This document shows positions 33,401 to 51,480 of a stretch of 64,000 bases of DNA, piece after piece. The stretch is taken from the IMG/VR virus record IMGVR_UViG_3300010158_000027, positions 1 to 64,000 of that record, one strand, 5' to 3'. A program made the translations under genes and the position numbers. A model generated the notes under the pieces. The model searched no databases. It saw nothing but the letters and a program-made list of their open reading frames with translations, and had not been told where the DNA came from. The first letter of the stretch is position 1. Each line of letters opens with the position of its first letter.

Positions 33401-36400
33401 TCTGGCGATTATTCGCACGCAGAAGGTGCTGGTACCGTAGCATCTGGATATGCGGCACACGCAGAAGGTGATGGAACAATATCATCTGGTAACTATTCCC
33501 ACTCAGAAGGTGATGGAACAATATCATCTGGTAACTATTCCCACGCAGAAGGTACGTCAACGATTGCTGGATGGCGAGCATTTACTGTAACATCAGTAGT
33601 GTCTGGTTTAATAACTATATCAGATAACGTAGATTACTCTTCTGTATTTAATAGTAATATTGTTATATTAGATAACAATGAATACGGATATAACACAATT
33701 GCGTTCAGTTCACCAAATTTTACAATTCAATTAAATGATACTAACGTCAATACTGGAACATATGTTGCCGATTTCTTAAATTTAAATAGTCCATTAGCGA
33801 CCACCACCTTAGGGAATGGTACCCACTCCGCCGGGGATGGTACTAAAGCATTTGGTAATTATTCACACGCAGAAGGAACGGGAACGGTATCATATGGGGT
33901 ATCATCACACTCCGAAGGTTACGGATCATACACTTATGGGGATTATAGTCACTCAGAAGGTTATGCATCATCAACATATGGAAATCAGAGCCACGCTGAA
34001 GGTGGATCGACAGCAACATTTGGAAATTACAGCCACGCTGAAGGTTATGGTACGCAATCAGGTTGGAGAGCGTTTCCAGTATCCTCAGTAGTTGCTGGGT
34101 TAATAACCATATCGAATAATGTTGATTACACTTCTCAATTTACTTTGGGTGGGGGTAAAGTCATATTAGACAATAATTTATACACTTATAATACAATTTC
34201 ATACTCAGCGCCAAACTTTACAATACAATTAGATAACATCACGGTTAGTACTGGTAGTTATGTTGCGGATTATACTAATTTAAGTAGCTCGTGGGCGACA
34301 ATAGTCTTAGGTACTGCTTCTCACTCTGAAGGAACTGGAAATATATCGACGGGTGATTATAGTCACGCCGAAGGACAAGGAACGACTTCTATCGGTCAAA
34401 GTTCGCATTCTGAAGGGTTTTTAACAAAATCAATTGGAATTGCATCTCACTCTGAAGGTTATAGTACGACATCTATTGGTTCGTATTCCCATTCTGCTGG
34501 TTATAACGCAATCGCCAGCGGTAATACATCATTTATCCATTCAACTAATTCAGTTGTTGGTGGAGATAGAAGTGTGGTGTTAGGTGGACAAAACATTACA
34601 GGATTAACAAACGATACGGTTTATGTTCCTTATTTTAATTTAAATTATACCCCAATATTCAGTAATTCAAATACGGAAATTTTAAGTAGAAATTCATCAA
34701 ATGGTGATGTCGAATATACGCCACTAAGCGCATTTACAAGTCTTGATACGTATGTCACTGGATATACATATTCACCAACCACAAATACATTCACTATTAA
34801 ACAAAATCAAGGACAACCTAACATATCGGCATCGTTTGATAGTGTATCTGGTTTGACAGTTAACGGTTTATTGGAAGCAAATTCAATGTCGGCTAACACT
34901 TTTAGTGCCACAAGTATAGATAAAGTAGATTATATCATATTCAATACTGGAACAACAAGTGCAGCAACTGTTGCTGGTATGGTTTATTTTGATAATACAG
35001 AAAAATCGTTATCATATAATACATCAATTAATCAAGGAGTTACCGTTAACTTAGGACAACAAAACTATATTAGAGTGTTTAATAATAGTGGTGTTGATAT
35101 TCAAAGAGGTAAAGCTTTGGAGGTTTTATCTGCTTATAGTGGGTTACCATCAGTAACTCTCGCAGTTAATAAACATACGGGTTTTAATATTATTGGTGTT
35201 TCATCTGAAATCATACCTAACAACACCGAAGGTATTGCTATCACAAACGGAATTATTTCAGATATTCAATTAACCGGTATAACGGTTGGTTCTTTAGTTT
35301 ACGCATCAGATACCGTACCAGGTAAATTAGATGATGTTACAAATTATCTAAACTTCCCTCTTACGGCAAGAACAAATAGTGTTGGTTATGTGGTTCAAAC
35401 TGGAATCACAACTGGTAAATTATTCGTTAATATTAACAATGAGAATTCAGTATTATCTTTAACCGATTTAGAACGAAATGTATTGGAAGGAAATACATTA
35501 TCAACCGGTTTATTTGGGTTTACTGGGATGACAACTGGATCAACAACAACTTTTAATGTTGCTCCGTTGAAAGGTTGGTTGATTAAAAATACATATGAAT
35601 ATGCTACATTACCAGATGTTCAGAGTGTTAATTATACTGGTGGTACAAACATATCAGTCACTAATATTGCTTCAGCAGATTCAACATTTATTTTAATCAA
35701 TAGTGCTATAACTATTACACAACAAACAACATTTCCAACACCACAACAGAGAAGAGAAAATATCTATCTGGGTAAGATTAATCACCCAAATAGAACGAGT
35801 ATATTAAATATAAACAATACAGCTGATTATGATGTATCACCAATGTCATCTTTGCGTGATTTATGGTCACCTATAAGATTGATAAATCAAGGAATCGTAC
35901 CTTCACCAAATGGTGCTAATCTAAGTTTTAACACATCGGCCGGTATACTGTGGGGTAATGGTATTAATTGGCATAATAATCAATTAAGTCCTAATAATGT
36001 TAGTATTGCAGCAAAAGTTCCAGTATCGTTTAATTATAGAACACAAACTGGTGGAACTTCCACTAGTGTCACAGTTATTGACCCTCGTAATTATGATGTT
36101 GGTGGTGTAATAACTAGTATTGGTAATGCTGGTCTTGATGATGCAACTAATCAACGAATATATATGTACCCTACTGGTGTTATTAATGTTCTTTATGGTC
36201 AAACAGTATATACCAATTTAACTGCCGCTGTTGCTGCTGTACAGTCAGAGTCATTTATACCTTACCCTAATGCTGATAGCAGTGGTATACTTATTGGTGT
36301 ACTTTCGGTTAGAAATGATATTGGTACTGATGGACAATCATTAACCAATACGAGTTATGCTAAATTCACTTTTGTTTCTAAGTTTGGTGAAAGTTTTGGT

Positions 36401-38692
36401 GGAACTGGTGGTTTGTCAACAACAACACTTCAACAAGCGTATGATAATTCAACAACCCCAGAAATAACTACCAACGCAACGTTAGGTGGTTTATCGATAA
36501 AAAATGGTACTGGAAATGCCGATAACGTAACAAATTTAATAGAAGGTTTAAATGCCGCTGGTAACACAACATCATTTATTAGAGCTGATGGTGATATTTC
36601 TGGTACAACAATACAAACAAATGGTTTTACAGCAAATACTGGTGGAATGACAGCCACAACAGTTTCTGCCACAACAATTAATACTAATGGTGTTACCGCA
36701 ACAACAATTAATACAGGGGGGTTTAGTGCTAACGGAAATGGTTTAACCGCAACAACAATATCAGCAACAACATTACAAACGGGTGGGTTTTCCGCTAACA
36801 CTACAGGACTATCAGCATCAACTGTTAATATAAGAACAATCGGTAGTGGGTCCTCAGTTACCAACTTAGGTGTCGATTCTTCGGGTAATGTTGTCAGTGG
36901 TAGTACCCCTTCAATACCACAAGCTAATAAAATTTATGTTGATTCAATTAATGGGACTAATTCAACAGGTCAAGGAAATATTAACGCACCATACTTAACA
37001 GTAGAATACGCATTATCAGACATAACTAATACGGGAACGGTTACCGCAACCACTGCGAATGGTAGTGCGACATTAACATCCGTAAGTTCTACGGCTAATA
37101 TTGTTATAGGACAATTTATTACTGGTACTGGCATCCCATATAATTCAGTGGTTGTTAGTAAGACACCCAACACAATTGTATTAAGTCAATTATGTACAGC
37201 ATCAGCCACTATTACTGCAACTTGGTGGACTATTTATGAACTTATTCTGAACGGTAATTTTGTATGGGTTTCTAATTGGTTTAAACAAGGTTTTTTTATA
37301 AATGCTCAAACTTCAACTATATCATTCTCAGGAGTATTGTTATCACCAACTAGTCCTGTAGTACCAATAGTATTTAAAGGTGGTTTTTTATACGGAACAT
37401 CCGCATCAAGTAAATTTTTATCTATAAATGGGAGTTCAGTTGTAAAAGTATTTTTAAATCCAACAACTTATTCGAGTAGTGGTACTGGATATCAAATAGA
37501 TTGTAATCAAAATGGTAGTTCAAAATTTGATTCATTATATTTATTATGTGATAGTTTCTTAGCGAATTTTGGGTCAATTGCGGATATTGAAAGTGGTGGA
37601 GTATCTACCATAAAGGGTAATTATTATGGACTTTTGAGTGGTATTAGACTAAGATTCGCTACTATATTTTTTGATGGTGATTTAATTTGTCCAACTTCGG
37701 TTGCAGCATTTACGTCCGTAACTAGCGGTTATTTATTCACTAACGGTAGAATAACGGGAAATCTTTCAATACAAAGTAGTGGTGGTGTAGTTAATAGTAC
37801 CGTTACGGGTACTGCTCACTCATTGGGTTCAATTAGTACGGATTTGTTACAAACATTTAATGGTAAAATATTAGGAACTGTATCTGTACAAGGAATTTGC
37901 ACATTTAATGGAGTTGTTTATGGTAATATAACGGTGGTTGGTGGAACATCAATTTTTTTGGGTGTTTCAACTACAGTTGCAACTGTTACAACTAGCATAT
38001 CTGTTTCTAACGCAAAAGTGATAGCAACGGGTATGGCATCGATAGTTTCAGGAATTAATGGTATTGGGAATATAACTCTAACAAATTCAGCAACTTTAGA
38101 TATATTAGATAATGTAATAGGGGTTTCATACACCACTTATTCATCTGTACCCTTTATTTCTGTGGACGCAACATCAACATTAAATTTATATAAAACTAAT
38201 TTTGGAAACATATCTAGTTGTGCGGGAACGATTAACGTGTATGGTATATTTTCACATATTAATAAATCCGCAGACATAACGGGGTCATTAAACAATAAAG
38301 GTGGGACAATACAATTATTAAGATCTACCACAGAATCTGCAACTAGCACACCAACATTATTAATCTCTGGAGGTACATACCAACAAAACGGTGGTAAATT
38401 GTTATGTGCGGTATCAGATTCTAAATCGGGATTATTAAGAAAAACGGCAACGGGAGGTAAAATACAATTAATTAATCAGGCATATTTAAAGGTCGCAAAT
38501 GGGTTAGCTCCAATACAAATAATATCAAATACGGGGACAGCTCAAGATGTTGAAGTTTATTCGGTAATCGATAATTGTGCGGTTGGATTTAGAATTTCAA
38601 ACACATTTACCGATACAACATATGGAACAGCATATTCTCCAAATATTTTAGTGGGGGGTACGATGTTAGAAGATACAACTTATTTATTATAA
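30449..38692 (+). CDS. Giant adhesin/tail fibre with YadA-head-like 14-aa SHAEG repeats and a beta-helical C-terminus
   Basis: About 50 SHAEG-type repeats in six blocks; Gly/Ser/Thr-rich beta-strand C-terminal half. Confidence 0.8.
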   Translation: MEIKIYGEDSPLSGGTRYVTAISAETGFFDSFTITDIQSGSSVASLFITESGSVISGETNNFTGDTYWTSGTTGTTSIKAINSTGLDSTGNRSVAWGNQTLALGDDSTAWGYLTTAGWKGFTVSSVVAGLITISDNVDYSTEFTSGTVLLDSTQYTYNTVTFSSPNFTIQLNDTTVNTGTYVSDLSNLNSPLATVTVGNGAHSAGDSTKSLGNYSHAEGQNTLASGDYSHAEGYYAISSGDYSHAEGSGTIASGSYSHAEGDNTVAIGNNSHAEGTSTTASGKSSHAEGNTTTAVADYSHAEGGNTTASGVYSHAEGNNTTASGISSHAEGDSTTASGDYSHAEGNNTTASGIGSHAEGASTISSGDFSHTEGFQTKTGGNNGYLAISVSAGLVTLDASYGDVSADYPTGNYLYLNDYAYNNSYTTVALIIDSTSFNGTETEILLIDTSITTTTAVVGNINLNPANWTGDQVYGAPNSHAEGDNTLASGYASHAEGVSAIAAGGNSHAEGNFAIAIGGYSHAEGTNTKSTGDGSHAEGITTQSSGLYSHAEGQDTLTIGQYSHAEGNLTTAGWRAFTVTSVVAGLITISDNVDYTAAFTSGEVLLDTRVYTYNTIAFTSPDFTIQLDDTTVNSGTYVADFSNLNSPLASYIAGTGAHSTGNGTKALGDFSETGGDITLASGYGSHAEGSSTQATGDASHSEGVNTRAEGPHAHSEGYLTRASGDAAHAEGKTSIAHGYYSHAEGQQTTAYGQSSHAEGNSTTASGSYSHAEGAGTETRGNAAHAEGSSTIAIGDYSHTEGNTTQSGWRGFGVSSVVAGLITINDDIDYSAEFPGSDVLLDNIIYSYNSISFSSPSFTIQLDDITINTGTYVADLTNLTSTAYLATTLGAYSHAEGENTLASGPASHAEGESTSATSDYSHAEGFNTLASGSYSHAEGGGTTASGEYSHAEGGGTTASGGASHAEGQATQASGQSSHAEGESTTASGDYSHAEGAGTVASGYAAHAEGDGTISSGNYSHSEGDGTISSGNYSHAEGTSTIAGWRAFTVTSVVSGLITISDNVDYSSVFNSNIVILDNNEYGYNTIAFSSPNFTIQLNDTNVNTGTYVADFLNLNSPLATTTLGNGTHSAGDGTKAFGNYSHAEGTGTVSYGVSSHSEGYGSYTYGDYSHSEGYASSTYGNQSHAEGGSTATFGNYSHAEGYGTQSGWRAFPVSSVVAGLITISNNVDYTSQFTLGGGKVILDNNLYTYNTISYSAPNFTIQLDNITVSTGSYVADYTNLSSSWATIVLGTASHSEGTGNISTGDYSHAEGQGTTSIGQSSHSEGFLTKSIGIASHSEGYSTTSIGSYSHSAGYNAIASGNTSFIHSTNSVVGGDRSVVLGGQNITGLTNDTVYVPYFNLNYTPIFSNSNTEILSRNSSNGDVEYTPLSAFTSLDTYVTGYTYSPTTNTFTIKQNQGQPNISASFDSVSGLTVNGLLEANSMSANTFSATSIDKVDYIIFNTGTTSAATVAGMVYFDNTEKSLSYNTSINQGVTVNLGQQNYIRVFNNSGVDIQRGKALEVLSAYSGLPSVTLAVNKHTGFNIIGVSSEIIPNNTEGIAITNGIISDIQLTGITVGSLVYASDTVPGKLDDVTNYLNFPLTARTNSVGYVVQTGITTGKLFVNINNENSVLSLTDLERNVLEGNTLSTGLFGFTGMTTGSTTTFNVAPLKGWLIKNTYEYATLPDVQSVNYTGGTNISVTNIASADSTFILINSAITITQQTTFPTPQQRRENIYLGKINHPNRTSILNINNTADYDVSPMSSLRDLWSPIRLINQGIVPSPNGANLSFNTSAGILWGNGINWHNNQLSPNNVSIAAKVPVSFNYRTQTGGTSTSVTVIDPRNYDVGGVITSIGNAGLDDATNQRIYMYPTGVINVLYGQTVYTNLTAAVAAVQSESFIPYPNADSSGILIGVLSVRNDIGTDGQSLTNTSYAKFTFVSKFGESFGGTGGLSTTTLQQAYDNSTTPEITTNATLGGLSIKNGTGNADNVTNLIEGLNAAGNTTSFIRADGDISGTTIQTNGFTANTGGMTATTVSATTINTNGVTATTINTGGFSANGNGLTATTISATTLQTGGFSANTTGLSASTVNIRTIGSGSSVTNLGVDSSGNVVSGSTPSIPQANKIYVDSINGTNSTGQGNINAPYLTVEYALSDITNTGTVTATTANGSATLTSVSSTANIVIGQFITGTGIPYNSVVVSKTPNTIVLSQLCTASATITATWWTIYELILNGNFVWVSNWFKQGFFINAQTSTISFSGVLLSPTSPVVPIVFKGGFLYGTSASSKFLSINGSSVVKVFLNPTTYSSSGTGYQIDCNQNGSSKFDSLYLLCDSFLANFGSIADIESGGVSTIKGNYYGLLSGIRLRFATIFFDGDLICPTSVAAFTSVTSGYLFTNGRITGNLSIQSSGGVVNSTVTGTAHSLGSISTDLLQTFNGKILGTVSVQGICTFNGVVYGNITVVGGTSIFLGVSTTVATVTTSISVSNAKVIATGMASIVSGINGIGNITLTNSATLDILDNVIGVSYTTYSSVPFISVDATSTLNLYKTNFGNISSCAGTINVYGIFSHINKSADITGSLNNKGGTIQLLRSTTESATSTPTLLISGGTYQQNGGKLLCAVSDSKSGLLRKTATGGKIQLINQAYLKVANGLAPIQIISNTGTAQDVEVYSVIDNCAVGFRISNTFTDTTYGTAYSPNILVGGTMLEDTTYLL

Positions 38693-39020: not shown

Positions 39021-39023
39021 AAG

Positions 39024-40535: not shown

Positions 40536-40722
40536 AATTAATTCAGATTGGTAATGAGATGTAGTGTTTTTTATTGATACAATCGGAAATGTGGTTAATA
40601 CCCCTACTTAATGTTATTTGACATTCATTTAAATTTGAATCGTACACTAGATTAACTAATCCTGTTTTTCTATAATTAAATCTATTTAATTCGATTATTA
40701 GGATATTTATTAAATAAAGCTA

Positions 40723-43122
40723 ATGTCGAATAAAAGAATTTCACAGTTACCATATATAGGTGCAGATAAAATTTCGGGCAATACCTTAGTCCCTTTAGTC
40801 ACTTACTATTCAGCGACTACAGGAACTACCGTACACTCAAATCTCGGTGATGTACAATCGTTTATACTAAGCGGACAGACATTAACGGGAGGAACGTATA
40901 ACTCAACATCGGGTAATCTTACGTTAGTTAATAATAGTGGTGGAACCATAATAATTTCAGGAATAACTTCATCAGCGGGTACTAGTGGGACATCTGGTAC
41001 GTCAGGTATTAATGGTATAAATGGTACTAGCGGTATTGACGGCACTAGTGGAATATCAGGAACTAGCGGTATTGACGGAACTTCAGGGTTAAGCGGAACT
41101 AGCGGTATTGACGGAACTTCAGGGTTAAGCGGAACTAGTGGTATCGATGGAACGTCAGGTGTAAACGGTACTAGCGGCACATCAGGAACGAGCGGTATTG
41201 ATGGGACTTCAGGTGTAAGTGGAACTAGCGGAAGTAGTGGTACGTCGGGAATTAACGGAACTAGCGGGGTAAGTGGTACATCAGGTATTAACGGAACGTC
41301 AGGAACGAGTGGAATAAATGGTACTAGTGGTATTAACGGCACTAGTGGAGAGTCGGGATCATCAGGGACTAGCGGAATAAACGGTAGTTCAGGTACGTCA
41401 GGTACAAGTGGAATAATTTATATTACAAATCAAACCACAGGTTCGGTGACGTATTACACAACATTGGAACTTGCGAGAGATGGATCTGTTTCTGGAGATA
41501 CTATATATGTAAATACTGGAACATATATAGTAACTACAACCGCAGCTAACGGATTAAGTAAAAGTGGAGTGAATTGGTATTTTCAACCAGGTACGGTAGT
41601 GTCTAAAGTAACATCAGGTCACATATTTAGTGATAATGGTTTTGCTCTTAATGCGAATGTGTATGGAAATGGAACTTTTACTAAATCAACAACCACAGGT
41701 AATATATTTTATAATACATTATCAAACGCAATATTTGAAGCAAAATCAGTTACATCAAGTATAGATGATTGTTTTTTAACAACAACAGCTTCAAATTTAT
41801 ATTTCAATGTTAAATTTGCCGTATCAAGTGGTGGTAGAGTTTTACATATAGCCGGTTATTCAACAAGTCTTATAAAAATTGATATGATATCTTGGAGATC
41901 CACAGCGTCTAATTGTATCGGAGGAACTACCTGGTGGTATAATACTGATGTTCAAGTAACTGGGGAATTATTAGAATCTACAACGGCACAAGCTGTGGGT
42001 AATTATAATAGTGGAGCCGTATTAAATTTAAATATTACAAAAATACTTGGAGTAACTTATGCTTTATCTTCAGGTGATGGAAGTAATGGATATCCAAATA
42101 TTATAAATTGTGCTTATTGTACAGGTATATCAGATATTGGTAAAAATTATATCCTTAATGGTCAATTTGGGGTATTAAATTATGTTGGTAGTAATGGTGC
42201 CTTTGTTAATGGTGGAAGATTTGCAACAATTACTTTAACAGGTGGTGGACATGTAATTACAACTCTTGGGGCTAATTTTACACTACCTTCTACTGGTACA
42301 ATAACACAAAGTTCTGGGGTATTAGACGTAACTATTGATACTTTTCATTATGGTATTGGATTTACCATAACAGGAGGTGTTTGTAATATTAGGAATCAAT
42401 CAGTATCAAACCAATTATCAGGAGCTTTAGATAGAATAGTAAATGGTGGAACATTAAACTTATATACTAATTTTATTCATGGTGGAAATCCTGATTCTGG
42501 AGTATGGTATGCGATGAAATTACAATCAGGAACATTAAGACTATTAGCTTCAGTACAAAATAACTTTAATGTTGCATCAAGTAATTTAGCGGCACACGGA
42601 ATAGTATGGGTTGGTGGTAAATTAATTATTGATAGATCAACTATTTTTATAACAGATACCGTTGCATTACCGATACAAGCAACAACCGCTGGTTTATCTT
42701 TAAGAGTTCTTACAGGTGGATTAAGCACAAATATTACGGCGGATGGGGGAGTATTACCAGGTAAAAAAATGAAATATAAATTTACCATAAGCGCAGTTGC
42801 AGCAACAGGAATAAATATTTTAATACCAACCTCTTATAACATTTCAGAATCAAACACTGGGGTGTATAATACTAAAGCTCTTTTAGCTCAACGAATGGCT
42901 TCATTAATTAATGGTAGTCCATTTTTAAATGTTGCGGTAATTGCTACACAAGACATACCAGGAACTGATGAATACTTTTATATAGAAACATTAACCGCGG
43001 GCCCCACATTTTCATATAATACTCCTGTTAATTTTTCAGCTATTAATATTCAAAGATGGAATAGTTATACTATAACGAACATAACTGGAGGATCAATTTT
43101 AGAAAACTCAAACGTAGAATAA
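40723..43122 (+). CDS. Fibre protein with GTS collagen-like stalk and beta-helix-like C-terminal domain
   Basis: [10 protein letters not shown] start; GTS block; [11 protein letters not shown] beta-helix cap motif. Confidence 0.75.
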
Positions 43123-43123
43123 G

Positions 43124-43459
43124 ATGGAATTACAAAACATAGTAGTAGACTTTAAAGAAATCACAACAACCACAATGTATAAAGACGTACATTATGATGT
43201 GGATGTTATGTCGGAGATTGAACCCGTTAAAATTGAGTTTGAGATTGCTTATGGTATCACATTCGATAGAGCAATAATACAATTAACTGAGGATCAACAT
43301 TTATGTGAACCAAGAATACTTTGTCAAAAAGAAGATGAACAAACGATTATAACTATTGTAGATATAAGAGATAATCATCCATCACTTATGTTGGAATTAG
43401 ATAAAATAAAATTATTAATTGAAGAACAATTACTTAATAATACGAATAATGGCGATTAG
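43124..43459 (+). CDS. Small acidic protein after fibre (chaperone candidate)
   Basis: Position and size only. Confidence 0.6.
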
Positions 43460-45338
43460 AGATAAGATAATAAGTGGGGGTAATGGTATAAATTTTACTA
43501 AGGAGACGGATTCTAGTACTGACTGGACTGGAATTACCAATAACACATATTTTAGAGATGTTGCGGACGGATTAATACATTATAAAAATTCGTCTGGATC
43601 AATATTAGAAATATATAATCTAAGTACTTCGGGGACTAGTGGAACATCAGGTACTTCCGGAATAAATGGTATTAACGGAACGTCAGGAACGAGTGGTGTA
43701 AATGGTTTAAACGGAACTAGCGGAACATCGGGTATAAATGGGACGTCTGGAACAAGCGGTATAAATGGGACGTCAGGAATCAACGGTACAATCGGTTTAA
43801 GTGGAACATCAGGAACAAGTGGTACCAATGGGTTAAACGGCACATCTGGAACGAGCGGATCATCAGGGACTAGTGGAATTAATGGAACATCAGGTACTAG
43901 CGGTAGAAATGGGACATCTGGTATAGATGGAACGTCTGGTACGTCAGGTAGAAATGGTACTTCAGGGACTAGCGGGATATCACCAACAGTATCAGGGTCT
44001 AATGACCAAATACTGACTTCAAATGGTGCTGGTGGAATTATTGCCGAATCTCTTTTAACATTTGACGGTACAAAATTAAGCGTATTGTATCAAGCCGGTG
44101 ATGAAGGTGGTGAAATATTATTAAATAAACCTGAAACCAACACTACCATTTCAGGTACAGGGGTTACTTTTGATGTATGGCAAAATAGAATTAGGTTTTT
44201 TGAACAAGGTGGAACGGCAAGAGGTGCGTATATTGATATAACTGAATGTGCTGCCGGTGTCGGTACAAACCTTTTAACTGGTGGGTCAACTTCATCAGGA
44301 ACCAGTGGCACATCGGGTAGAAATGGTACATCTGGTATTAACGGAACTAGCGGGACATCCGGAACAAGTGGTGTTAATGGTAGTAGTGGAACTAGTGGAG
44401 TTAATGGTACTTCAGGAATAAACGGCACTAGTGGTACGTCAGGTAGAAATGGAACATCAGGAATTGATGGTACGTCGGGTACAAGTGGTATTAACGGTAC
44501 ATCAGGAACTAGTGGTGTTAACGGCACATCTGGTACTTCAGGAATCAATGGACAAAATGGAACATCTGGAACATCTGGAACATCTGGAACTTCAGGAACG
44601 AGCGGTATAGCACTTATATTAAATAATACCAACAATTACGTTTTAACCGCGACAGGTACTTCAGGGGTTATAAATGGTGAATCTAACTTAACTTTTGATG
44701 GTACAACTGCAATTATAACAGGAAATCTAAATGTATCCGGAGGTACACAATCTATCTTCTCTGGAAATAGTACTTTAGAGTTAGTTAAGATAATTCAAAC
44801 GGGAACAGGGGATGCACTTGTTGTTGAGGATTCATCAAATGGTGACACTTCACATTTCGTTATCGACGCTAGTGGTAATACGTCAATAGGAACATCTACA
44901 ACGGGAAGAAAGTTAACAGTGTCTGGAGATTCAACATTCATTCATAATCCATTAACTCTTTTAACCGCATCAGTTACCGCATATGGGGATATAGTAACTT
45001 TTGGTAGTGGGTCATTAACTGCGGGTAGTTTATATTACCTAGGTAGTGGAGGATCATGGACAGCTGCAGATGCCAGTTCAAGTACATCATCAACTGGGTT
45101 ATTAGGTATCGCTTTAGGTACAACCGCTTCATCAGGGTTATTAATAAAGGGGTACGCCAGATCCACCACATACTCAGCAACAACAGGTCAGATATTATAC
45201 GTATCAACAACCGCCGGTTCAATCACTCCAACCGCGCCATCAGCCGCTACCGAAATAATTAGAATAATTGGGTATCAGTTATCCACAAATGATGATGTCA
45301 TATACTTTACCCCTTCAAATGATTGGATAGAATTATAA
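43449..45338 (+). CDS. Fibre protein with two GTS collagen-like blocks
   Basis: GTS blocks at about 43623-43980 and 44290-44607. Confidence 0.75.
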
Positions 45339-45344
45339 TATATT

Positions 45345-45854
45345 ATGGGATATTTAAGAAAAAAAAATGGTGTAAGTGTTTATGGACCTAGTCAGATTTT
45401 AATTAATAGTGGCGGAACCCTAAACGTTTCTGTTAGTAACGTAGAAAAGGTGCTAACATCATTAACCGTTCCGGCAAATACTTTCGTAACTGGTGATTCC
45501 ATAAACATTATTAGTAGGATAGTTAAAACGACGACTAACGGAATAACGGAGATAAGAATGAGAATAGGTACTACAGGTACGATTTCAGATACATTGGTTG
45601 GTTCGTATAGCGCAACATCGGCGACTCATACGATAATACCAATTTTTAGAACGATAAGTTACTATAGTGGAACGACTAATTATTTAATGGATCCAACAGA
45701 TAACTTGGCATCCATTGACGTGACGAGCGACAGTACTATTAGCTCAATAACTATAGATTGGACTACGAATCAAATTATCACAATAAGTGGTATAAACGCA
45801 ATATCTGGTACCGATAGTATGAATGGTATGTTTATAAAAACAAAGGTGATATGA
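45345..45854 (+). CDS. About 170-aa beta-rich paralogue 1
   Basis: SIDWTTNQIITISG C-terminal motif. Confidence 0.75.
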   Translation: MGYLRKKNGVSVYGPSQILINSGGTLNVSVSNVEKVLTSLTVPANTFVTGDSINIISRIVKTTTNGITEIRMRIGTTGTISDTLVGSYSATSATHTIIPIFRTISYYSGTTNYLMDPTDNLASIDVTSDSTISSITIDWTTNQIITISGINAISGTDSMNGMFIKTKVI

Positions 45855-46369
45855 TAAACAAATTAAACGGAATTAAATTTGGTGTTGAAAGTAAAACACT
45901 ATCAAGTGTATCGGTATCCGGAACTACTACCACACTAATAGATAGTACTTATATACCTGCAAATACTTTAATTCCTAGATATGCCGACGTCGCAATTGTT
46001 AAGTTCATGTCTTCAATAACTATTACTTTAGGTACCCCTGATTTTACGTACTACCTGTATTGGAATACGTCATCAAGTTTAACAGGGGCAATCCAATTAG
46101 GTACATTTACAACCGCAGCGAGTAGTAACGGAGTTTCATTTTTAAGGCATTTTTATCTTAAATATGACCCACCAAGTTTAAATGGGTTTTATGTGTTTGA
46201 TCCCACAGTATCGTTAATTTATGATTACGGAGACATAACCTCCGGACTTTTAACTGCAGTCACTGGAATTGACTTTACAATCGATGGGTATTTAATATAT
46301 GCAGCAAATAAAAATCTTAGTAAGTCTACAGCATACACCACAGGATCCCAATTTAATGTTAACATATGA
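45851..46369 (+). CDS. About 170-aa beta-rich paralogue 2
   Basis: GIDFTIDGYLIYAA motif. Confidence 0.75.
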   Translation: MINKLNGIKFGVESKTLSSVSVSGTTTTLIDSTYIPANTLIPRYADVAIVKFMSSITITLGTPDFTYYLYWNTSSSLTGAIQLGTFTTAASSNGVSFLRHFYLKYDPPSLNGFYVFDPTVSLIYDYGDITSGLLTAVTGIDFTIDGYLIYAANKNLSKSTAYTTGSQFNVNI

Positions 46370-46875
46370 TAAGATACGGAAACAACATACCAATTAATTT
46401 CACAACTAACGGTGTTAATCGTGCGTCAGGAACGACAACGGAAACCGTTTTATGTAGTGTTTCGATTTCTGGTGGTTCCTTTAAGTCAGGTGATGTTGTT
46501 TTTATTGAAGGTATGTTTGATAGTAAAACGACATTGGGTGTAACCACAAAAATATACGTAAATACGGGATCAACGATTACTGCGGCAACCCAAATTATGT
46601 CTAGGGCAATAAGTGCTGGTGATACATGGCAAATACAAGAAAGGGTTTTACATATTGTTAGAGGTGATGGGTCAATGACAGGAACTACCCCCGATAGAGG
46701 GACAATATTTGCCGCGTCAGGTACCGCCAATTTTACCGATTTTAGATCAACAACTAATAGTATAGCATCGATTGATTGGACTACCGATAAAGTAATATTT
46801 TTTACAGGAAAGCTGAATTCGGCAGCTGCAGGTAATTATATTGATCAATATTTTATGAAAGTATGGACATATTAG
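46366..46875 (+). CDS. About 170-aa beta-rich paralogue 3
   Basis: SIDWTTDKVIFFTG motif. Confidence 0.75.
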   Translation: MIRYGNNIPINFTTNGVNRASGTTTETVLCSVSISGGSFKSGDVVFIEGMFDSKTTLGVTTKIYVNTGSTITAATQIMSRAISAGDTWQIQERVLHIVRGDGSMTGTTPDRGTIFAASGTANFTDFRSTTNSIASIDWTTDKVIFFTGKLNSAAAGNYIDQYFMKVWTY

Positions 46876-47090
46876 CTATATCTAAAATTAAAAATGGGTT
46901 ATCATGGAATAATCAGGATAAATTTTTTACAACTAATTTTTATTCAGACGGTTACACCATTCCAGATATTATCCACATAGTATTGGAATTAAATCAAACA
47001 ATATATTGGTTTAATTGCCAAGAAATAACAATCGATGGATTAAGATTTAATGACCCAATAGAAGTTAGAAACTATTTATTTGTACCGTGA
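46863..47090 (+). CDS. Small hypothetical protein
   Basis: ORF coupled to its neighbours. Confidence 0.6.
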   Translation: MDILAISKIKNGLSWNNQDKFFTTNFYSDGYTIPDIIHIVLELNQTIYWFNCQEITIDGLRFNDPIEVRNYLFVP

Positions 47091-47695
47091 GATACTTTAA
47101 AAATATAAAAGACATATACCCAAAATACGATAAGTTTGGTGACTATTTTATTTTAACAAAAAAAATAGAAAGGGGTATTGGTAATGAAAATTTTGATTCG
47201 GAGTTTGAATTAAGTTATTCCGGATTAGTTGAAGACACAACTTACGAAACCAATAAAGAGTTCATCGCACTATTAAATAAAAACGGAGACTTGGTAATGT
47301 CGAATTCGAATTCAATGTTGAGACATTACAAACCATATTTAGATTCATCAAATGGTGAAGTTTTAATATCAGGATTAGGTTTAGGGTTATCACTATTACC
47401 CCTATTAGAGGATAGTGCCGTAACTAAAATCGACATTATAGAAATGGATATGGATATAATAGAATATGTTTACATTAATAGATTAAAAAAGTTAGACATT
47501 AATAATAAAATTAATATTATCAACCACGACATTTTTACATTCGAAACGACAAACACCTACGATTATATTTTATTAGATACGTGGTCGTCCCCAGATGAAA
47601 CATCAATATCGGAAGCGAACACATTAAAACTTAAGTTCACATCAAATTTAAAAAGTGGTGGATCAATTGATGTTCCTATTTTAGATTTTAATTAA
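47087..47695 (+). CDS. Class I SAM-dependent methyltransferase (spermidine-synthase-like fold)
   Basis: VLISGLGLG motif I, IDIIEMD, IINHDIF, YDYILLD. Confidence 0.75.
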   Translation: MRYFKNIKDIYPKYDKFGDYFILTKKIERGIGNENFDSEFELSYSGLVEDTTYETNKEFIALLNKNGDLVMSNSNSMLRHYKPYLDSSNGEVLISGLGLGLSLLPLLEDSAVTKIDIIEMDMDIIEYVYINRLKKLDINNKINIINHDIFTFETTNTYDYILLDTWSSPDETSISEANTLKLKFTSNLKSGGSIDVPILDFN

Positions 47696-47728: not shown

Positions 47729-50700
47729 ATGTTAAAAGATGAAAAGTGTTATGTTTATTACGCAACTGAAAAGTATTTTGAAATCGCAAAAAAATCCATT
47801 GAATCAATTCGTAAATATTCTGATTTACCCATATACCTTTATTTATTAAACTCCGATTTAAAGTTGGAGATTGATAATACGTTCACAATAAAATGGGAAT
47901 GTGATGTTGATTTTGATTCGGATATGTTCGAGTCGTTTGAAAACAAAAATTTCTACATTAATAGGAGAAATAAAAATATCTATAAAATTTTAATACAACG
48001 TCCATTAATTGTTAAACATTGTTTAGAGAATTATTCGAAGGTGGTTTGTTATGTTGACTCGGATTCCATATCCACCCCCTATGTTGATAATATATTTGAC
48101 TTTTATAACAAGGATTCAAACCACCCCTATTTTACTCAAGGAGTTTATGATTATTTAAATTTTTATGGTAGAGGTGGAATCCCAATCGATGAAAACAGTA
48201 CAAACACATTAGAGTACCCACTATGTGAGTTATTAAACACCAATCAAAAAAATAGAATCACATATAGACAAACGGGATATTTCGTTTCAAATGAAAAGTG
48301 CATTGATTTTTTAAATGAATGGTCGGAAGTCTGTAATCACCCGAAGGTTTTGGAGAACCCAGAACACTACGCTCCCTATCATGAAGAAACTGTTATGAAT
48401 GTACTTTTATGGAAATATAACTATCAGGATGGTTTACCCTATATGTATGTTAATGGTTCATTAGAAAGAGTGGATGAAATATATAATACCATTAAATTTA
48501 ATGGTGAGGATAATTTGGTATCCGAGTTATATAAAATACCAAAAAATAAAGAAACCTTATTATTTTTTCACGGAGAAAAAAGAGTGGAGGTTATGGAACA
48601 GATGATTCGGAGTATTGAAAAAAATTATAAAATGAAACTCCTATTTTTGGCTCCACATTTATCCACAGGTGGTATGCCGTCATTTCTTTTAAAAAGAATT
48701 CAGGAACTTATTAAATATAATAAAGACATTGAAATTTTTGTTATTGAATATTCATATTATGGTCCATCGTACGTTGTCCAAAGAAACCAAATTATAGATA
48801 TTATAGGGGATGATCATTTTTTTGAATTGGGTTCAAATAAAGATAGGGTAATTGATATAATAAAAGAAAACAATATTGATATTGTTCACATTGATGAAAA
48901 CGTTGAGATGTTAAATGAACCTATGTCAACAAATGTTTTAAACTTATTATATTCAGATGATCGAACATGGAGAATGGTGGAGACGTGTCATAATATTTGG
49001 TTTAATGCAAATCAAAATAAAATATATAACCCCGACTCTTATATATTTTGCACATCATGGCATGAGTCAAATACGTTTTCAGATTTACCCTCACCAAAAA
49101 CAACCATACAATTTCCTTTGGAGAATAAAAAACCAACATTGGATGACAGGTTGGAATCCAAAAGACAATTAAATTTTGAATCAGATAAAATCCATATAAT
49201 TAATGTTGGGCTTTGGACAAGTGGCAAAAACCAAAAAGAGGGTGTTGGGGTTGCAAAACTTTTATATGAGACAAATCCTGAAATAGTATTTCATTTCATT
49301 GGAAACCAAGCCCCCAATTTTAAAGACTATTGGGAACCCATAATGTGCGATATCCCACCAAACGTTAAGGTGTGGGGTGAAATGGATAATGTTGATTTAT
49401 TTATGCAATCTTCGGATATTTTAATGTTTAATTCAACATTAGAGTGTAATCCGCTAGTAGTTAGAGAGGCGATTTCACATGAATTAAAAATTATCACAAG
49501 AACATTACCCCAATACATGGGAATTTATGATAGGTACGTATACCCAATTGAATCCTCGAATGTTAATGAACTAAAAGATTTAATTTTAAAGGTAATTAAA
49601 TCTGAAAACAAATATAAAAATGTTATCGATGAGAATTATGAGTTTTCAAAAACTCACATCGACACATATAAACAAACATTACTTAATTCACCAATAAAAC
49701 AAAATAAAATGGAAAACAAAATTCAAATAGTGACTCATTTTGTCGAAGCCCCCTTTATTGAAATAAAAGGTCAGAGTTCGGCAGACTATAAAATTAAGGT
49801 ATATAATGAAAACGATAGTTGTATTTACGAGAATACCATAAAGGTTAACCATTGGGTAAAATTAAATAGGGGATACTACACAAAATGGCGAACTGAAATA
49901 TATGAAGATAATGAATTAATCTATAATGAAACTATAAACTTAAAAGATAAAAGGGTTTATGTATCTTTTGAAAGTAAATCATTGGGGGACACACTCTCTT
50001 GGATTCCGTATGTGGAGGAATTTAGAAAAAAACACGAATGTAAAGTTATTGTCTCCACGTTTTTAAATAATATACTCGAAAACCAATACCCAGAAATTGA
50101 GTTTGTTAACCCCAACTCGGAGGTTCACAATTTACATGCACTCTATAGAATAGGTTGGTTTTATAAACCCGACGGTAATTTTGATTCAAATAGACACCCA
50201 TATGATCCGAAATCACAACCACTTCAAAAAACCGCATCAGACATTTTAGGTTTAGAATTTAAAGAAATAAAACCAAACATAAAATACCCAAGACTTTCAA
50301 AAAAGAAAAAGGTGGGAATTGGTTTACACGGAACTGCGCAATCAAAATATTGGAACAATCCTGATGGATGGCAAGAGGTGGTGAATTACCTTACCGGAAA
50401 GGGATATGAGGTGGTTTTATACTCTAAAGAGGAAAACGGTTACATGGGGAATAAACATCCGTATGGTGTCACTAAATTTAAGGAAGGATCATTAAATAAT
50501 TTAATTTATGATATGTCAACTTGTGAGTTTTTCATAGGTATTGGGTCGGGACTTAGTTGGCTCGCTTGGTCGATAGATTTGCCCATCGTTTTAATATCGG
50601 GGTTTAGTGAAAAATGGACGGAGACTCAATCTAATACGTATCGAGTTTTAAATGATAACGTTTGTCATGGGTGTTTTAATATGTGTAGATTAAACCCTTC

Positions 50701-50815
50701 AGATTGGAATTGGTGTCCAATGTTAAAAGATACGGATAGAATGTTTGAATGCACAAAATCAATCACATCTAAAATGGTAATTAATCAAATCGATCAACTA
50801 ATAATATCGCAATAA
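47729..50815 (+). CDS. Three-domain glycosyltransferase: GT-A (DxD), GT-B (GT4-like) and a TibC/Aah-like heptosyltransferase domain
   Basis: YVDSDS; FLAPHLSTGG (from 48632); from about 49709 SLGD, KYWNN, SGLSWLAW, ISGFS and the Cys cluster CHGC..WCP..FECT. Confidence 0.85.
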   Translation: MLKDEKCYVYYATEKYFEIAKKSIESIRKYSDLPIYLYLLNSDLKLEIDNTFTIKWECDVDFDSDMFESFENKNFYINRRNKNIYKILIQRPLIVKHCLENYSKVVCYVDSDSISTPYVDNIFDFYNKDSNHPYFTQGVYDYLNFYGRGGIPIDENSTNTLEYPLCELLNTNQKNRITYRQTGYFVSNEKCIDFLNEWSEVCNHPKVLENPEHYAPYHEETVMNVLLWKYNYQDGLPYMYVNGSLERVDEIYNTIKFNGEDNLVSELYKIPKNKETLLFFHGEKRVEVMEQMIRSIEKNYKMKLLFLAPHLSTGGMPSFLLKRIQELIKYNKDIEIFVIEYSYYGPSYVVQRNQIIDIIGDDHFFELGSNKDRVIDIIKENNIDIVHIDENVEMLNEPMSTNVLNLLYSDDRTWRMVETCHNIWFNANQNKIYNPDSYIFCTSWHESNTFSDLPSPKTTIQFPLENKKPTLDDRLESKRQLNFESDKIHIINVGLWTSGKNQKEGVGVAKLLYETNPEIVFHFIGNQAPNFKDYWEPIMCDIPPNVKVWGEMDNVDLFMQSSDILMFNSTLECNPLVVREAISHELKIITRTLPQYMGIYDRYVYPIESSNVNELKDLILKVIKSENKYKNVIDENYEFSKTHIDTYKQTLLNSPIKQNKMENKIQIVTHFVEAPFIEIKGQSSADYKIKVYNENDSCIYENTIKVNHWVKLNRGYYTKWRTEIYEDNELIYNETINLKDKRVYVSFESKSLGDTLSWIPYVEEFRKKHECKVIVSTFLNNILENQYPEIEFVNPNSEVHNLHALYRIGWFYKPDGNFDSNRHPYDPKSQPLQKTASDILGLEFKEIKPNIKYPRLSKKKKVGIGLHGTAQSKYWNNPDGWQEVVNYLTGKGYEVVLYSKEENGYMGNKHPYGVTKFKEGSLNNLIYDMSTCEFFIGIGSGLSWLAWSIDLPIVLISGFSEKWTETQSNTYRVLNDNVCHGCFNMCRLNPSDWNWCPMLKDTDRMFECTKSITSKMVINQIDQLIISQ

Positions 50816-50848
50816 AAAACCCCCACTATTTCTAATGGGGGGTCAATA

Positions 50849-51379: not shown

Positions 51380-51480
51380 AATCCTTTTATTATAAATATA
51401 TACATCTCCACAAAAAACCCATCTCCACAAAAAAATACATAAAAAAATTACCACTATTTCTAATGGTAAATCTTTTGTCT

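What the first reader, a model, noticed from the sequence alone, without database searches (positions are those of the whole stretch)
47729..50815. TibC/Aah-like protein O-glycosyltransferase directly after a Ser/Thr-rich fibre cluster: candidate phage virion glycosylation system
Seen: the C-terminal 368 aa (from about 49709) carry, in order, NETINLKDKRVYVSF..SLGD..W.PY.E.F..KH.C, QSKYWNN..GW.EV, FFIGIGSGLSWLAWS...LISGFS and CHGC...WCP..KDTDRMFECTKSIT. It is fused to GT-A and GT4-like domains and follows about 20 kb of fibre genes packed with TSG/SSG/ASG motifs. Known (from memory): these motifs and the four-Cys iron finger define the bacterial autotransporter heptosyltransferases TibC/Aah, which O-heptosylate serines in adhesin repeats; the LGD Asp is catalytic. 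Inference: the phage glycosylates its own fibres, and the two extra GT domains may extend the glycan, for stability, receptor binding or shielding. The donor may not be ADP-heptose in a Bacteroidota host.
Basis: partly seen in the sequence, partly recalled or inferred. Interest (0 to 1): 0.85.

Follow-up and report, generated by a model that had tools for sequence, protein, structure and literature searches.

The report
Phage sugar-adding enzyme beside collagen-like fibres
A giant T4-like phage carries a three-part sugar-transferring enzyme whose last part resembles the enzyme that E. coli uses to sugar-coat its adhesins. In phages and bacteria alike, this kind of enzyme sits next to proteins made of Gly-Thr-Ser repeats, so the phage probably glycosylates its own collagen-like tail fibres.

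Summary
ORF 47729-50815 (1028 aa) has three modules:
- a retaining GT-A module (aa 1-300, DxD motif);
- a GT4 module (about aa 303-650, EX7E motif);
- a C-terminal TibC/Aah-like module (aa 661-1028).

The C-terminal module scores 273.7 bits on NCBIfam TIGR04414 (cutoff 200), matches TibC in the PDB at E=1e-59, and its model superposes on TibC with TM 0.87. The catalytic Asp and all four iron-binding Cys are conserved.

It is not a canonical autotransporter heptosyltransferase. A tree of 113 domains splits in two with full support. The canonical clade is bacterial and stand-alone, and none of its 56 loci has a GTS-repeat ORF nearby. Two neighbours were tested and both are AIDA-I-like with TIGR04415 repeats. 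The sister clade holds the window's enzyme; 40 of its 57 loci carry a proline-free Gly-Thr-Ser/Gly-Ser-Ser repeat protein nearby. These include two-gene cassettes in Methylobacter, Methylomicrobium and Polaromonas.

In the window's subclade the Arg that contacts adenine in TibC is replaced by Leu/Val/Ile, with two correlated pocket changes. The donor is therefore probably not ADP-heptose.

Best reading: the enzyme starts and extends O-glycans on the phage's collagen-like fibres. Nothing biochemical has been shown. I rate it a new variant of a known kind, interest about 0.7.

The parts
47729..50815 (+). Three-module glycosyltransferase gene (1028 aa)
   Evidence: ORF. Pfam GT1 and GT9 hits. TIGR04414 above its cutoff. 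The same protein is found on a 296-kb contig from a second sample.
47729..48628 (+). Module 1: retaining GT-A fold, GT6/GT8-like, with DxD at aa 110-112
   Evidence: AlphaFold model pLDDT 87.9, pTM 0.89. Foldseek best hits are ABO transferases, BoGT6a, glycogenin and UGGT, probability 1.0, TM 0.43-0.51. D110 and D112 are invariant in 28 homologues.
48635..49678 (+). Module 2: GT4-type GT-B glycosyltransferase with an EX7E motif at aa 572-580
   Evidence: Pfam PF00534 at aa 474-637, 49.1 bits against a cutoff of 26.4. The ECNPLVVRE motif is at aa 572-580 and is nearly invariant in alignment A1. PF00534 is listed for all 120 best full-length homologues.
49709..50812 (+). Module 3: TibC/Aah-like protein O-glycosyltransferase (beta-barrel, GT-B core, Cys4 iron finger)
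   Evidence: TIGR04414 at aa 686-1023. PDB TibC E=1e-59. Model TM 0.87 to 4rap. Residues D754, T869, K873, W944 and C979/C982/C996/C1008 are conserved, while TibC R286 corresponds to L925.
47087..47695 (+). Separate SAM-methyltransferase-fold gene, 33 nt upstream of the glycosyltransferase
   Evidence: phrog_15480 methyltransferase, E=7e-12. Pfam Spermine_synth, E=3.5e-6. Two TAA stops separate it from the glycosyltransferase ATG. Its role in glycan tailoring is an inference.
27907..30447 (+). Collagen-like fibre protein (846 aa) with 199 G-X-Y triplets, 105 of them GTS; predicted substrate
   Evidence: Pfam Collagen E=4e-87. PHROG tail-fibre families. Triplet counts and 0.8% proline.
40723..43122 (+). 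Collagen-like fibre protein (799 aa) with 49 triplets, 26 of them GTS; predicted substrate
   Evidence: Pfam Collagen E=3e-21. PHROG tail fibre. Triplet counts.
43419..45338 (+). Collagen-like fibre protein (639 aa; JGI aa) with 74 triplets, 44 of them GTS; the nearest predicted substrate, 2.4 kb upstream
   Evidence: Pfam Collagen E=8e-32. Triplet counts. Distance. JGI gene call.
30449..38692 (+). Giant fibre or adhesin-like protein (2747 aa) with 44 SH[AST]EG motifs at a 14-residue period; possible secondary substrate
   Evidence: Pfam YadA_head E=5e-7. Weak match to the trimeric autotransporter Ata. Period. Homologues lie near the enzyme in only 2 of 44 viral loci.
45345..47090 (+). Four small, tightly packed ORFs that link the fibre genes to the methyltransferase and glycosyltransferase genes in one + strand run
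   Evidence: Start and stop codons overlap or lie 6 nt apart. No family hits. No terminator-like site on the + strand between the last fibre gene (ends 45338) and 50.8 kb, apart from one weak 5-pair site inside the glycosyltransferase ORF at 48668. ORFs a and c are weakly similar, E=4e-6.
50820..50841 (.). GC-rich 9-bp hairpin between the glycosyltransferase gene and the convergent gene 50849-51454; likely end of the transcription unit
   Evidence: Terminator-like site.

Best explanation
The gene encodes a cytoplasmic, late-expressed, three-module protein O-glycosyltransferase. It decorates the phage's own proline-free collagen-like fibre proteins on the Ser/Thr of their Gly-Thr-Ser triplets. 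The TibC-like C-terminal module makes the first sugar-protein bond. It is an inverting GT-B enzyme, with Asp754 as the base and an iron-binding Cys4 knuckle. The GT4 and GT-A modules then add further sugars, and the adjacent methyltransferase may cap the glycan. The result would be a short oligosaccharide repeated hundreds of times along each fibre.

What is shown: domain identities, conserved catalytic residues, clade structure, gene order and co-occurrence.

What is inferred: the substrate, the order in which the modules act, and a nucleotide-sugar donor other than ADP-heptose. The likely benefits are also inferred: stabilising or hydrating a hydroxyproline-free triple helix, resisting proteases, or altering receptor binding.
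For: - Family assignment: TIGR04414 at 273.7 bits against a cutoff of 200; TibC E=1e-59; model TM 0.87 to TibC.
- Competence: the TibC catalytic base D110, phosphate and sugar contacts T226, K230 and W305, and iron ligands C339/342/358/370 are all conserved in the window. The Asp and the four Cys are invariant in 18 viral homologues. DxD and EX7E motifs are kept in the other two modules.
- Partner: the domain tree splits with 100% support. The canonical clade has 0 of 56 loci with a GTS-repeat ORF. Two of its neighbours were tested and both carry TIGR04415 target repeats and AIDA-I similarity. The window's clade has 40 of 57 loci with a GTS/GSS-repeat ORF.
- Arrangement: the GTS ORF lies upstream on the same strand, downstream on the same strand, or downstream on the opposite strand, so the link is not one frozen synteny.
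- Bacterial cassettes: 16 of 20 bacterial-genome loci of this clade have a GTS ORF. Nine lie within 180 bp of it, and it is usually a small signal-peptide or lipoprotein ORF. The other flanking genes differ between genomes. This mirrors the TibC-TibA and Aah-AIDA-I pairs.
- Control: 0 of 80 terminase-centred loci from phages with 83-89% identical terminase hold a GTS run, against 20 of 24 enzyme-centred viral loci of at least 15 kb.
- Gene order: the glycosyltransferase is the last gene of an uninterrupted + strand run that starts in the fibre cluster.
- Precedent: collagen-like regions of Bacillus BclA carry short O-glycans (PMC12357932).
Against: - There is no biochemical or proteomic evidence; everything rests on sequence and context.
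- GTS fibres are far commoner than the enzyme. Only 6 of 120 viral stretches found with a (GTS)6 DNA pattern hold the domain. Only 4 of 50,697 phage records have it. Such fibres can therefore function without it.
- 17 of 57 loci of the clade show no GTS ORF in the fetched flank, including some with long flanks (L029, L038, L042, L052).
- The co-occurrence statistic is not corrected for phylogeny.
- TibC and Aah modify Ser. In some relatives' fibres GTN triplets outnumber GTS, so the acceptor residue is unclear.
- The adenine-contact Arg is missing. No sugar-nucleotide synthesis gene is seen in about 72 kb around the gene, so the donor is unknown.
Confidence: 0.65

Rival explanations
1. The enzyme glycosylates a different virion protein. 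The main candidate is the 2747-aa SH[AST]EG beta-roll protein, whose short strand-turn repeats resemble autotransporter passengers more than a collagen helix does.
For: This protein has weak YadA-head and Ata similarity and is 27% Ser+Thr, with an ASG/SSG turn in each 14-residue repeat. TibC recognises beta-helical repeats.
Against: Homologues of this protein lie near the enzyme in only 2 of 44 viral loci and in none of the bacterial cassettes. It has no TIGR04415 match.
Confidence: 0.1
2. The enzyme acts on host molecules during infection, such as host surface proteins, LPS or capsule. The purpose would be superinfection exclusion or host takeover, and its position next to the fibres is only late-gene synteny.
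For: Phage glycosyltransferases that alter host surfaces are well known (general knowledge; discussed in PMC12619734). 17 of 57 clade loci lack a nearby GTS ORF. The enzyme is rare among phages with GTS fibres.
Against: The domain is not LPS-type: 15 bits on heptosyltransferase I against a cutoff of 185, and TM 0.46-0.56 to WaaC/WaaF. The GTS partner recurs in bacterial chromosomes with otherwise unrelated neighbours and in three different gene arrangements in phages. Synteny alone does not explain this.
Confidence: 0.1
3. The enzyme is a canonical ADP-heptose-dependent heptosyltransferase. It works exactly like TibC, as a dodecameric ring using host ADP-heptose, and has simply been retargeted to fibres.
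For: The TIGR04414 equivalog model is passed. The heptose-O4 contact W305, the phosphate contacts T226 and K230, and the thumb-like GYMGN segment are retained.
Against: TibC R286 contacts adenine N1, and R286A abolishes or strongly reduces activity. It corresponds to L925 here and is hydrophobic throughout the 43-row subclade. Q224 to His and D256 to Ser change together with it. The score is well below canonical members, which reach 443-615 bits. The domain is fused behind 660 aa, which may not fit the TibC ring.
Confidence: 0.12
4. The protein glycosylates phage DNA or a small molecule rather than a protein.
For: Jumbo and T4-like phages often glycosylate DNA with GT-B enzymes (general knowledge; cited in PMC12619734).
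Against: The only characterised relatives of module 3 are protein O-glycosyltransferases. The gene lies in the structural module, not the replication module. The bacterial homologues pair with secreted repeat proteins.
Confidence: 0.03

Closest known systems
TibC/Aah bacterial autotransporter heptosyltransferases (BAHT; NCBIfam TIGR04414; PDB 4RAP/4RB4)
   Same: Same fold and domain layout: beta-barrel, GT-B core and Cys4 iron finger, with TM 0.87. The catalytic Asp, phosphate and sugar contacts and all four Cys are conserved. The genetic logic is also the same, with the enzyme encoded beside a highly repetitive, Ser/Thr-rich surface protein.
   Different: It belongs to a sister clade (100% support) that scores 270-350 bits rather than 443-615. 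The partner is a Gly-Thr/Ser-Ser triplet-repeat protein, not a TIGR04415 strand-loop-strand autotransporter. The adenine-contact Arg286 is replaced, together with Q224 and D256. The domain is fused behind GT-A and GT4 modules and is encoded by a phage.
O-glycosylated collagen-like proteins of Bacillus exosporium (BclA family)
   Same: These are bacterial collagen-like Gly-X-Y stalks rich in Thr/Ser that carry many short O-glycans, with glycosyltransferase genes nearby (PMC12357932).
   Different: BclA repeats contain proline (GPT, from memory), whereas these are proline-free GTS. The BclA glycosyltransferases are not TibC-like. The setting is a spore surface, not a phage fibre.
Mycobacteriophage virion glycosylation (Freeman et al. 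2023, cited in PMC12619734)
   Same: Phage-encoded glycosyltransferases modify the phage's own structural proteins.
   Different: There the targets are the C-termini of the capsid and tail-tube subunits, and the enzymes are separate small glycosyltransferases. No TibC-like domain and no repeat target are involved (from the citation and from memory; not re-examined here).
Multi-domain viral glycan assembly enzymes such as chlorovirus PBCV-1 A064R (from memory)
   Same: One polypeptide combines several glycosyltransferase modules with a methyltransferase to build a virus-specific glycan on a structural protein.
   Different: That is a eukaryotic virus making an N-linked capsid glycan with unrelated domains. 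Here the methyltransferase is a separate gene in the window, although FkbM-type methyltransferases are fused in many relatives.

Membership tests
BAHT (TibC/Aah, TIGR04414) | Scores above the curated cutoff of the equivalog HMM | tested here: met
   273.7 bits against a cutoff of 200, aa 686-1023. This is clearly below canonical members, which reach 443-615 bits.
BAHT (TibC/Aah, TIGR04414) | Protomer fold: N-terminal beta-barrel, GT-B catalytic core and inserted iron-finger knuckle | tested here: met
   Model pLDDT 87.7 with eight N-terminal strands. Foldseek TM 0.87 and E=4e-35 to 4rap/4rb4 over about 385 columns.
BAHT (TibC/Aah, TIGR04414) | Catalytic base Asp110 in the LGD motif | tested here: met
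   D754 is aligned to TibC D110. It is invariant in 113 domains. Its role is described in PMC4358343.
BAHT (TibC/Aah, TIGR04414) | Four iron-coordinating cysteines (TibC C339, C342, C358, C370) | tested here: met
   C979, C982, C996 and C1008, conserved in all but one of 113 domains. Their roles are described in PMC4358343. Iron binding itself is not testable here.
BAHT (TibC/Aah, TIGR04414) | Donor contacts T226, K230 (beta-phosphate) and W305 (heptose O4) | tested here: met
   T869, K873 and W944.
BAHT (TibC/Aah, TIGR04414) | Arg286 contact to adenine N1, the stated basis of ADP-sugar specificity | tested here: not met
   The residue is L925 in the window, and L/V/I/M/T/A throughout the window's subclade. 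Arg is kept in 54 of 56 canonical domains. Q224 to His867 and D256 to Ser899 change with it.
BAHT (TibC/Aah, TIGR04414) | Adjacent substrate is an autotransporter with strand-loop-strand repeats (TIGR04415) | tested here: not met
   None of seven window fibre proteins matches TIGR04415 at E<=1. Two canonical-clade neighbours match strongly, at 97.9 and 408.5 bits.
BAHT (TibC/Aah, TIGR04414) | Stand-alone protein of about 400 aa that forms a dodecameric ring | tested here: not met
   The domain is the C-terminal third of a 1028-aa protein. The thumb-tip equivalents are Y905 and M906. The oligomeric state cannot be tested with these tools.
BAHT (TibC/Aah, TIGR04414) | Transfers heptose from ADP-heptose to Ser | not testable with these tools
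   This needs an enzyme assay or mass spectrometry. The sequence evidence argues against ADP as the nucleotide.
LPS heptosyltransferases (GT9: WaaC/WaaF/WaaQ) | Scores above the family HMM cutoffs, with closest fold match to WaaC/WaaF | tested here: not met
   heptsyl_trn_I gives 15 bits against a cutoff of 185.3. TM is 0.46-0.56 against 0.87 for TibC.
GT4 retaining GT-B glycosyltransferases (Pfam PF00534) | Pfam gathering score and the EX7E motif | tested here: met
   49.1 bits against 26.4. E572-x7-E580 is present and conserved in alignment A1.
Retaining GT-A glycosyltransferases (GT6/GT8-like) | GT-A fold with a DxD metal and nucleotide-binding motif | tested here: met
   Fold hits to ABO transferases, BoGT6a and glycogenin at probability 1.0 and TM 0.43-0.51. 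D110 and D112 are invariant. No Pfam family reaches significance for this protein itself, so the CAZy family is undetermined.
Collagen-like triple-helix proteins (substrate candidates) | Long uninterrupted Gly-X-Y tracts, with Pro/Hyp or another stabiliser | tested here: inconclusive
   The Pfam Collagen hit is strong (E=4e-87) and the tracts reach 199 triplets. Proline is only 0.8-1.6%, and triple-helix formation is not testable here.

The most novel reading that the evidence does not exclude
These enzymes are a previously unrecognised, widespread protein O-glycosylation system dedicated to Gly-Thr/Ser-Ser triplet repeats. Dense glycosylation would take the place of hydroxyproline in stabilising proline-free collagen-like helices. 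The interchangeable modules are GT2, GT8, GT25, GT32, pyruvyl-transferase and FkbM methyltransferase, with sulfotransferase and APS kinase genes alongside. They would give each jumbo phage lineage its own fibre glycan, which could affect host range or environmental persistence. The donor would be a nucleotide sugar other than ADP-heptose.
Probability: 0.3. Interest if true: 0.85.

Novelty: new variant of a known kind. Interest (0 to 1): 0.7.

Why it matters
The TibC/Aah family is known only as a virulence-associated modifier of autotransporter adhesins in Proteobacteria. This analysis points to an equally diverse sister branch. All of the 150 best-scoring 50%-identity clusters (each at least 303 bits) are 35-62% identical to the query, and most of them are multi-domain proteins. 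This branch is found mostly in large environmental phages and appears to be tied to a different repeat substrate.

If confirmed, three things would follow:
- It would add a second, mechanistically distinct case of phage virion glycosylation.
- It would give a concrete acceptor motif (G-T/S-S) and a simple two-gene bacterial model for studying it.
- It would offer an explanation for how proline-free collagen-like fibres, common in phage tail fibres, can be stabilised or diversified.

The remodelled nucleotide pocket would also make this a natural experiment in donor switching within the GT9-like fold.

Tried and rejected
- Read-through fusion of the upstream methyltransferase with the glycosyltransferase. 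The two ORFs are in the same frame, but two TAA stops lie between them and the glycosyltransferase has its own ATG. Rejected.
- PHROGs search of the glycosyltransferase: no family.
- Near-identity DNA search in cultured phages: no match.
- Sequence search of the N-terminal and middle modules against the PDB: nothing significant. The N-terminal module needed a structure prediction.
- Literature searches linking TibC, heptosyltransferase or O-heptosyltransferase with phage or collagen-like proteins gave only noise or unrelated papers. A search for Mel-JY01 found no paper. The jumbo-phage paper PMC12619734 and the cyanophage paper PMC12801897 mention glycosyltransferases only generically.
- Search for ADP-heptose or other sugar-nucleotide genes through precomputed Pfam hits over window 1-64000 plus 8 kb: none found. 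The remaining 210 kb or so of the contig was not examined.
- Bacterial cassette flanks were searched for sugar genes that might reveal the donor: none, only unrelated housekeeping genes.
Its clade was inferred from its 30% identity, its retained Arg286 and the TIGR04414 score pattern.
- Host assignment: no tRNAs. The only hints are weak: relatives in MAG bins labelled Bacteroidetes, Bacteroides and Saprospirales, and best matches of the neighbouring AAA+ gene to uncultured phage records of 634-642 kb.


Full report
**1. The observation**

ORF 47729-50815 (+) encodes 1028 aa. The C-terminal region matches NCBIfam TIGR04414 (autotransporter strand-loop-strand O-heptosyltransferase, Aah/TibC). 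The score is 273.7 bits, E=2.3e-81, against a curated cutoff of 200. LPS heptosyltransferase I reaches only 15 bits against a cutoff of 185. phmmer against the PDB finds only TibC (4rap, 4rb4) at E=1e-59.

An AlphaFold model of aa 661-1028 (pLDDT 87.7) superposes on TibC with TM 0.87. It superposes on WaaC, WaaF and a Veillonella GT9 enzyme with only TM 0.46-0.56.

Pfam places a GT4-type Glycos_transf_1 domain at aa 474-637, with an EX7E motif at aa 572-580. The first 304 aa gave no sequence hit. They fold confidently (pLDDT 87.9) into a GT-A domain. That domain matches retaining GT6, GT8 and GT24 enzymes and has an invariant DxD at aa 110-112.

**2. The setting**

The window is the first 64 kb of a 281-kb IMG/VR contig. 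The same genes occur on a 296-kb contig from another sample. Just beyond the window lie a terminase, a T4-type portal that carries an intein, an S77 prohead protease and a Gp23-type capsid gene. This is a T4-like jumbo phage.

Upstream of the enzyme are peptidoglycan-binding baseplate-like proteins and then a fibre cluster at 27907-45338:
- Three ORFs have strong Pfam Collagen hits and PHROG tail-fibre hits. Together they hold 322 G-X-Y triplets, 175 of them GTS, with only 0.8-1.6% proline.
- One 2747-aa ORF has 44 SH[AST]EG motifs at a 14-residue period and weak YadA-head similarity.

From the last fibre gene to the glycosyltransferase, the genes overlap or are separated by at most 33 nt. No convincing + strand terminator intervenes; the only + strand site in this stretch is a weak 5-pair hairpin inside the glycosyltransferase ORF (48668). 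A GC-rich hairpin follows the glycosyltransferase gene. The gene just upstream (47087-47695) has a methyltransferase fold. It is a separate gene, not a read-through fusion.

**3. Relatives**

A full-length search returned 3590 homologues. PF00534 (GT4) is listed for all of the 120 best, which were found through similarity that includes the TibC-like domain. The other modules vary: FkbM methyltransferase, GT25, GT32, GT8, GT2, polysaccharide pyruvyl-transferase and Methyltransf_23.

In a library of 1.84 billion representatives, 1475 clusters match the C-terminal module and 761 do so at E<=1e-30. The 150 best are mostly proteins of 500-2000 aa, some with two or three copies of the domain.

Forty-four IMG/VR loci carry it, many on contigs of 130-436 kb. 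Only 4 of 50,697 deposited phage records have it. These are Microcystis phage Mel-JY01, where it is the C-terminus of a 1226-aa protein annotated as a methyltransferase, and three uncultured phages of 636-735 kb. In two relatives the gene is followed by FkbM methyltransferase, sulfotransferase and APS-kinase genes, which suggests further glycan tailoring.

**4. Two clades with different partners**

I aligned 113 non-identical C-terminal domains from viral loci and from 80 loci in species-representative bacterial genomes and built a maximum-likelihood tree. It splits with 100% support.

| | Clade A | Clade B |
|---|---|---|
| Domains | 56 | 57 |
| Source | All bacterial: Burkholderia, Acetobacter, Bradyrhizobium, Victivallaceae and others | All viral sequences plus 20 bacterial-genome loci |
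| Form | Stand-alone proteins of 335-554 aa | Mostly multi-domain in phages; stand-alone in bacteria |
| TIGR04414 score (members sampled) | 443-615 bits | 270-350 bits |
| Neighbours | Two tested; both have TIGR04415 target repeats and AIDA-I similarity | GTS/GSS-repeat ORFs |
| Loci with a GTS-type run nearby | 0 of 56 | 40 of 57 |

A "GTS-type run" means an ORF within 8-10 kb with at least 8 consecutive G-X-Y triplets of which at least half of the X and Y positions are Ser or Thr. These are nearly always GTS, GSS or GTN with essentially no proline. The difference gives Fisher p=3e-17, uncorrected for phylogeny. None of the window's fibre proteins matches TIGR04415.

The link is not a single inherited gene order. 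In viral loci the repeat gene is upstream on the same strand (10 loci), downstream on the opposite strand (8) or downstream on the same strand (5).

The most telling cases are bacterial. In Methylobacter, Methylomicrobium, other Methylococcales, Polaromonas and other Beta- and Gammaproteobacteria, a stand-alone enzyme of 371-432 aa lies 14-180 bp from a small ORF. That ORF has a signal peptide or lipobox and a (GTS)n or (GSS)n tract. The remaining neighbours are unrelated housekeeping genes that differ from genome to genome. This is the same two-gene logic as TibC-TibA and Aah-AIDA-I, with a different repeat.

As a control, 80 loci centred on the terminase of phages with 83-89% identical terminase (0.95 Mb) contain no such run. 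By contrast, 20 of 24 enzyme-centred viral loci of at least 15 kb do.

**5. Catalytic competence and donor**

The TibC paper (PMC4358343) identifies these residues:
- Asp110 as the catalytic base;
- Thr226 and Lys230 as beta-phosphate contacts;
- Trp305 as the heptose-O4 contact;
- Arg286 as the adenine-N1 contact that explains ADP specificity (R286A abolishes or strongly reduces activity);
- Pro300 as the determinant of D,D-heptose selectivity;
- Cys339, 342, 358 and 370 as iron ligands.

The window has D754, T869, K873, W944 and C979/C982/C996/C1008 at the corresponding positions. It has Gly939 at the Pro300 position and Leu925 at the Arg286 position.

Arg is kept in 54 of 56 clade-A domains and in a basal part of clade B. 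It is replaced by Leu, Val, Ile, Met, Thr or Ala in the whole 43-row subclade that holds the window. Two further positions change together with it. TibC Gln224 becomes His867, two residues before the phosphate-binding Thr. TibC Asp256, at the end of a C-lobe strand, becomes Ser899. The Arg-retaining clade-B sequences mostly keep Gln and Asp.

I read this as a concerted remodelling of the nucleotide pocket and hence a donor other than ADP-heptose. That is an inference; only the role of Arg286 is documented. No sugar-nucleotide pathway gene is visible in about 72 kb around the gene.

**6. Mechanism proposed**

The TibC-like module starts O-glycosylation on Ser or Thr of the G-T-S triplets in newly made fibre chains in the cytoplasm. 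The GT4 and GT-A modules, both of retaining type, extend the glycan, and the adjacent methyltransferase may modify it. Since the three collagen-like proteins hold 322 triplets, a trimeric fibre could carry hundreds of glycans. O-glycosylated collagen-like regions are established for Bacillus BclA (PMC12357932). From memory, O-glycosylated Thr stabilises hydroxyproline-poor collagen in a vent worm cuticle, which makes a stabilising role plausible. Shielding or adhesion roles are equally open.

**7. Weaknesses**

- Nothing is shown biochemically.
- The reverse association is weak. Of 120 viral stretches retrieved with a (GTS)6 DNA pattern, only 6 hold the domain within the stored stretch. The enzyme is also very rare among cultured phages. 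GTS fibres therefore do not need it.
- Seventeen clade-B loci lack a GTS ORF in the fetched flank, some despite long flanks.
- In several relatives GTN triplets outnumber GTS, so it is unclear whether the acceptor is the X-position Thr or the Y-position Ser.
- The SHAEG protein cannot be excluded as an additional substrate, but it is not a conserved partner.
- The host is unknown.

**8. Comparison and verdict**

In sequence and fold, the C-terminal module is a member of the BAHT superfamily. It fails three features of the canonical family: the adenine-contact Arg, the TIGR04415 autotransporter partner and the stand-alone architecture. It is best described as a sister subfamily. It works like TibC, as a cytoplasmic enzyme that hyper-glycosylates a neighbouring repeat protein, but on a different repeat and probably with a different donor, inside a modular glycan-building polypeptide.

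I found no paper that connects this family with phages or collagen-like repeats. The only prior trace is automatic annotation, namely JGI's name for the homologues. I rate it a new variant of a known kind, with interest 0.7 and confidence 0.65 in the fibre-glycosylation reading.

Noticed in passing
window 30449-38692: The 2747-aa protein has five blocks of 14-residue SH[AST]EG repeats (YadA-head-like). They are separated by a recurring module of roughly 110-120 aa (GW[RK][AG]F.V.SVV.GLITI...). A long non-repetitive Ser/Thr-rich C-terminal half follows. It looks like a giant modular adhesin-like fibre.
   Followed up: partly
L255:14036-16813 (about 1 kb beyond the window's end): The T4-type portal gene carries an intein: Pfam Intein_splicing plus Portal_T4 in one 925-aa product.
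   Followed up: no
L046:14344-16309 and L131:13579-17644: In relatives, the multi-domain glycosyltransferase lies beside FkbM methyltransferase, sulfotransferase, APS-kinase and small nucleotidyltransferase genes. This suggests methylated and sulfated glycans on phage proteins. In L046 a GT25 gene and a GlcNAc-transferase-like gene (PF11397) lie just upstream.
   Followed up: partly
L048:7971-9941 (-): A 657-aa protein with 32 TPT motifs (a Thr-Pro repeat) lies directly upstream of the glycosyltransferase in one relative. It is a possible alternative acceptor type.
   Followed up: no
window 45345-46875: Three consecutive ORFs of 169-172 aa with 25-30% Ser+Thr lie between the last fibre gene and the methyltransferase. 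The first and third are weakly similar (28% identity, E=4e-6), and the third gives a weak virion-structural PHROG hit. They could be fibre accessory or chaperone proteins.
   Followed up: partly
window 54523-56745 (-) and 53377-54429 (-): A 740-aa double-AAA+ Clp/Hsp100-like ATPase (phrog_4871, E=4.5e-201) lies next to an M42-like aminopeptidase. The pair is syntenic with the glycosyltransferase in several relatives (L003-L005, L012, L016). The best database matches are uncultured phage records of 634-642 kb.
   Followed up: partly
window 28110-29948 (-): A 612-aa antisense ORF lies inside the GTS-repeat gene. It is almost certainly a shadow of the repeat. Local GC rises to 0.45 and GC skew to 0.35 because of the GGN-ACN-TCN codons.
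   Followed up: no
P0179, P0238, P0246: Some homologues contain two or three TibC-like stretches in one polypeptide. In others the domain is N-terminal rather than C-terminal.
   Followed up: no
The 80 best kept are 83-89% identical. The lineage therefore seems abundant in environmental metagenomes.
   Followed up: no
window 15364-15954, 14711-15337 (-), 8107-8532 (-): Ferritin/rubrerythrin-like, PAP2 phosphatase-like and FKBP-type isomerase genes lie among the early part of the window (precomputed Pfam hits).
   Followed up: no
L001:1-3052 (Microcystis phage Mel-JY01): A + strand ORF of over 1000 aa with 149 consecutive G-X-Y triplets (GTS/GSS) overlaps CDSs that are annotated on the opposite strand. 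The deposited annotation may have picked shadow ORFs. The glycosyltransferase there is annotated only as 'methyltransferase FkbM'.
   Followed up: no
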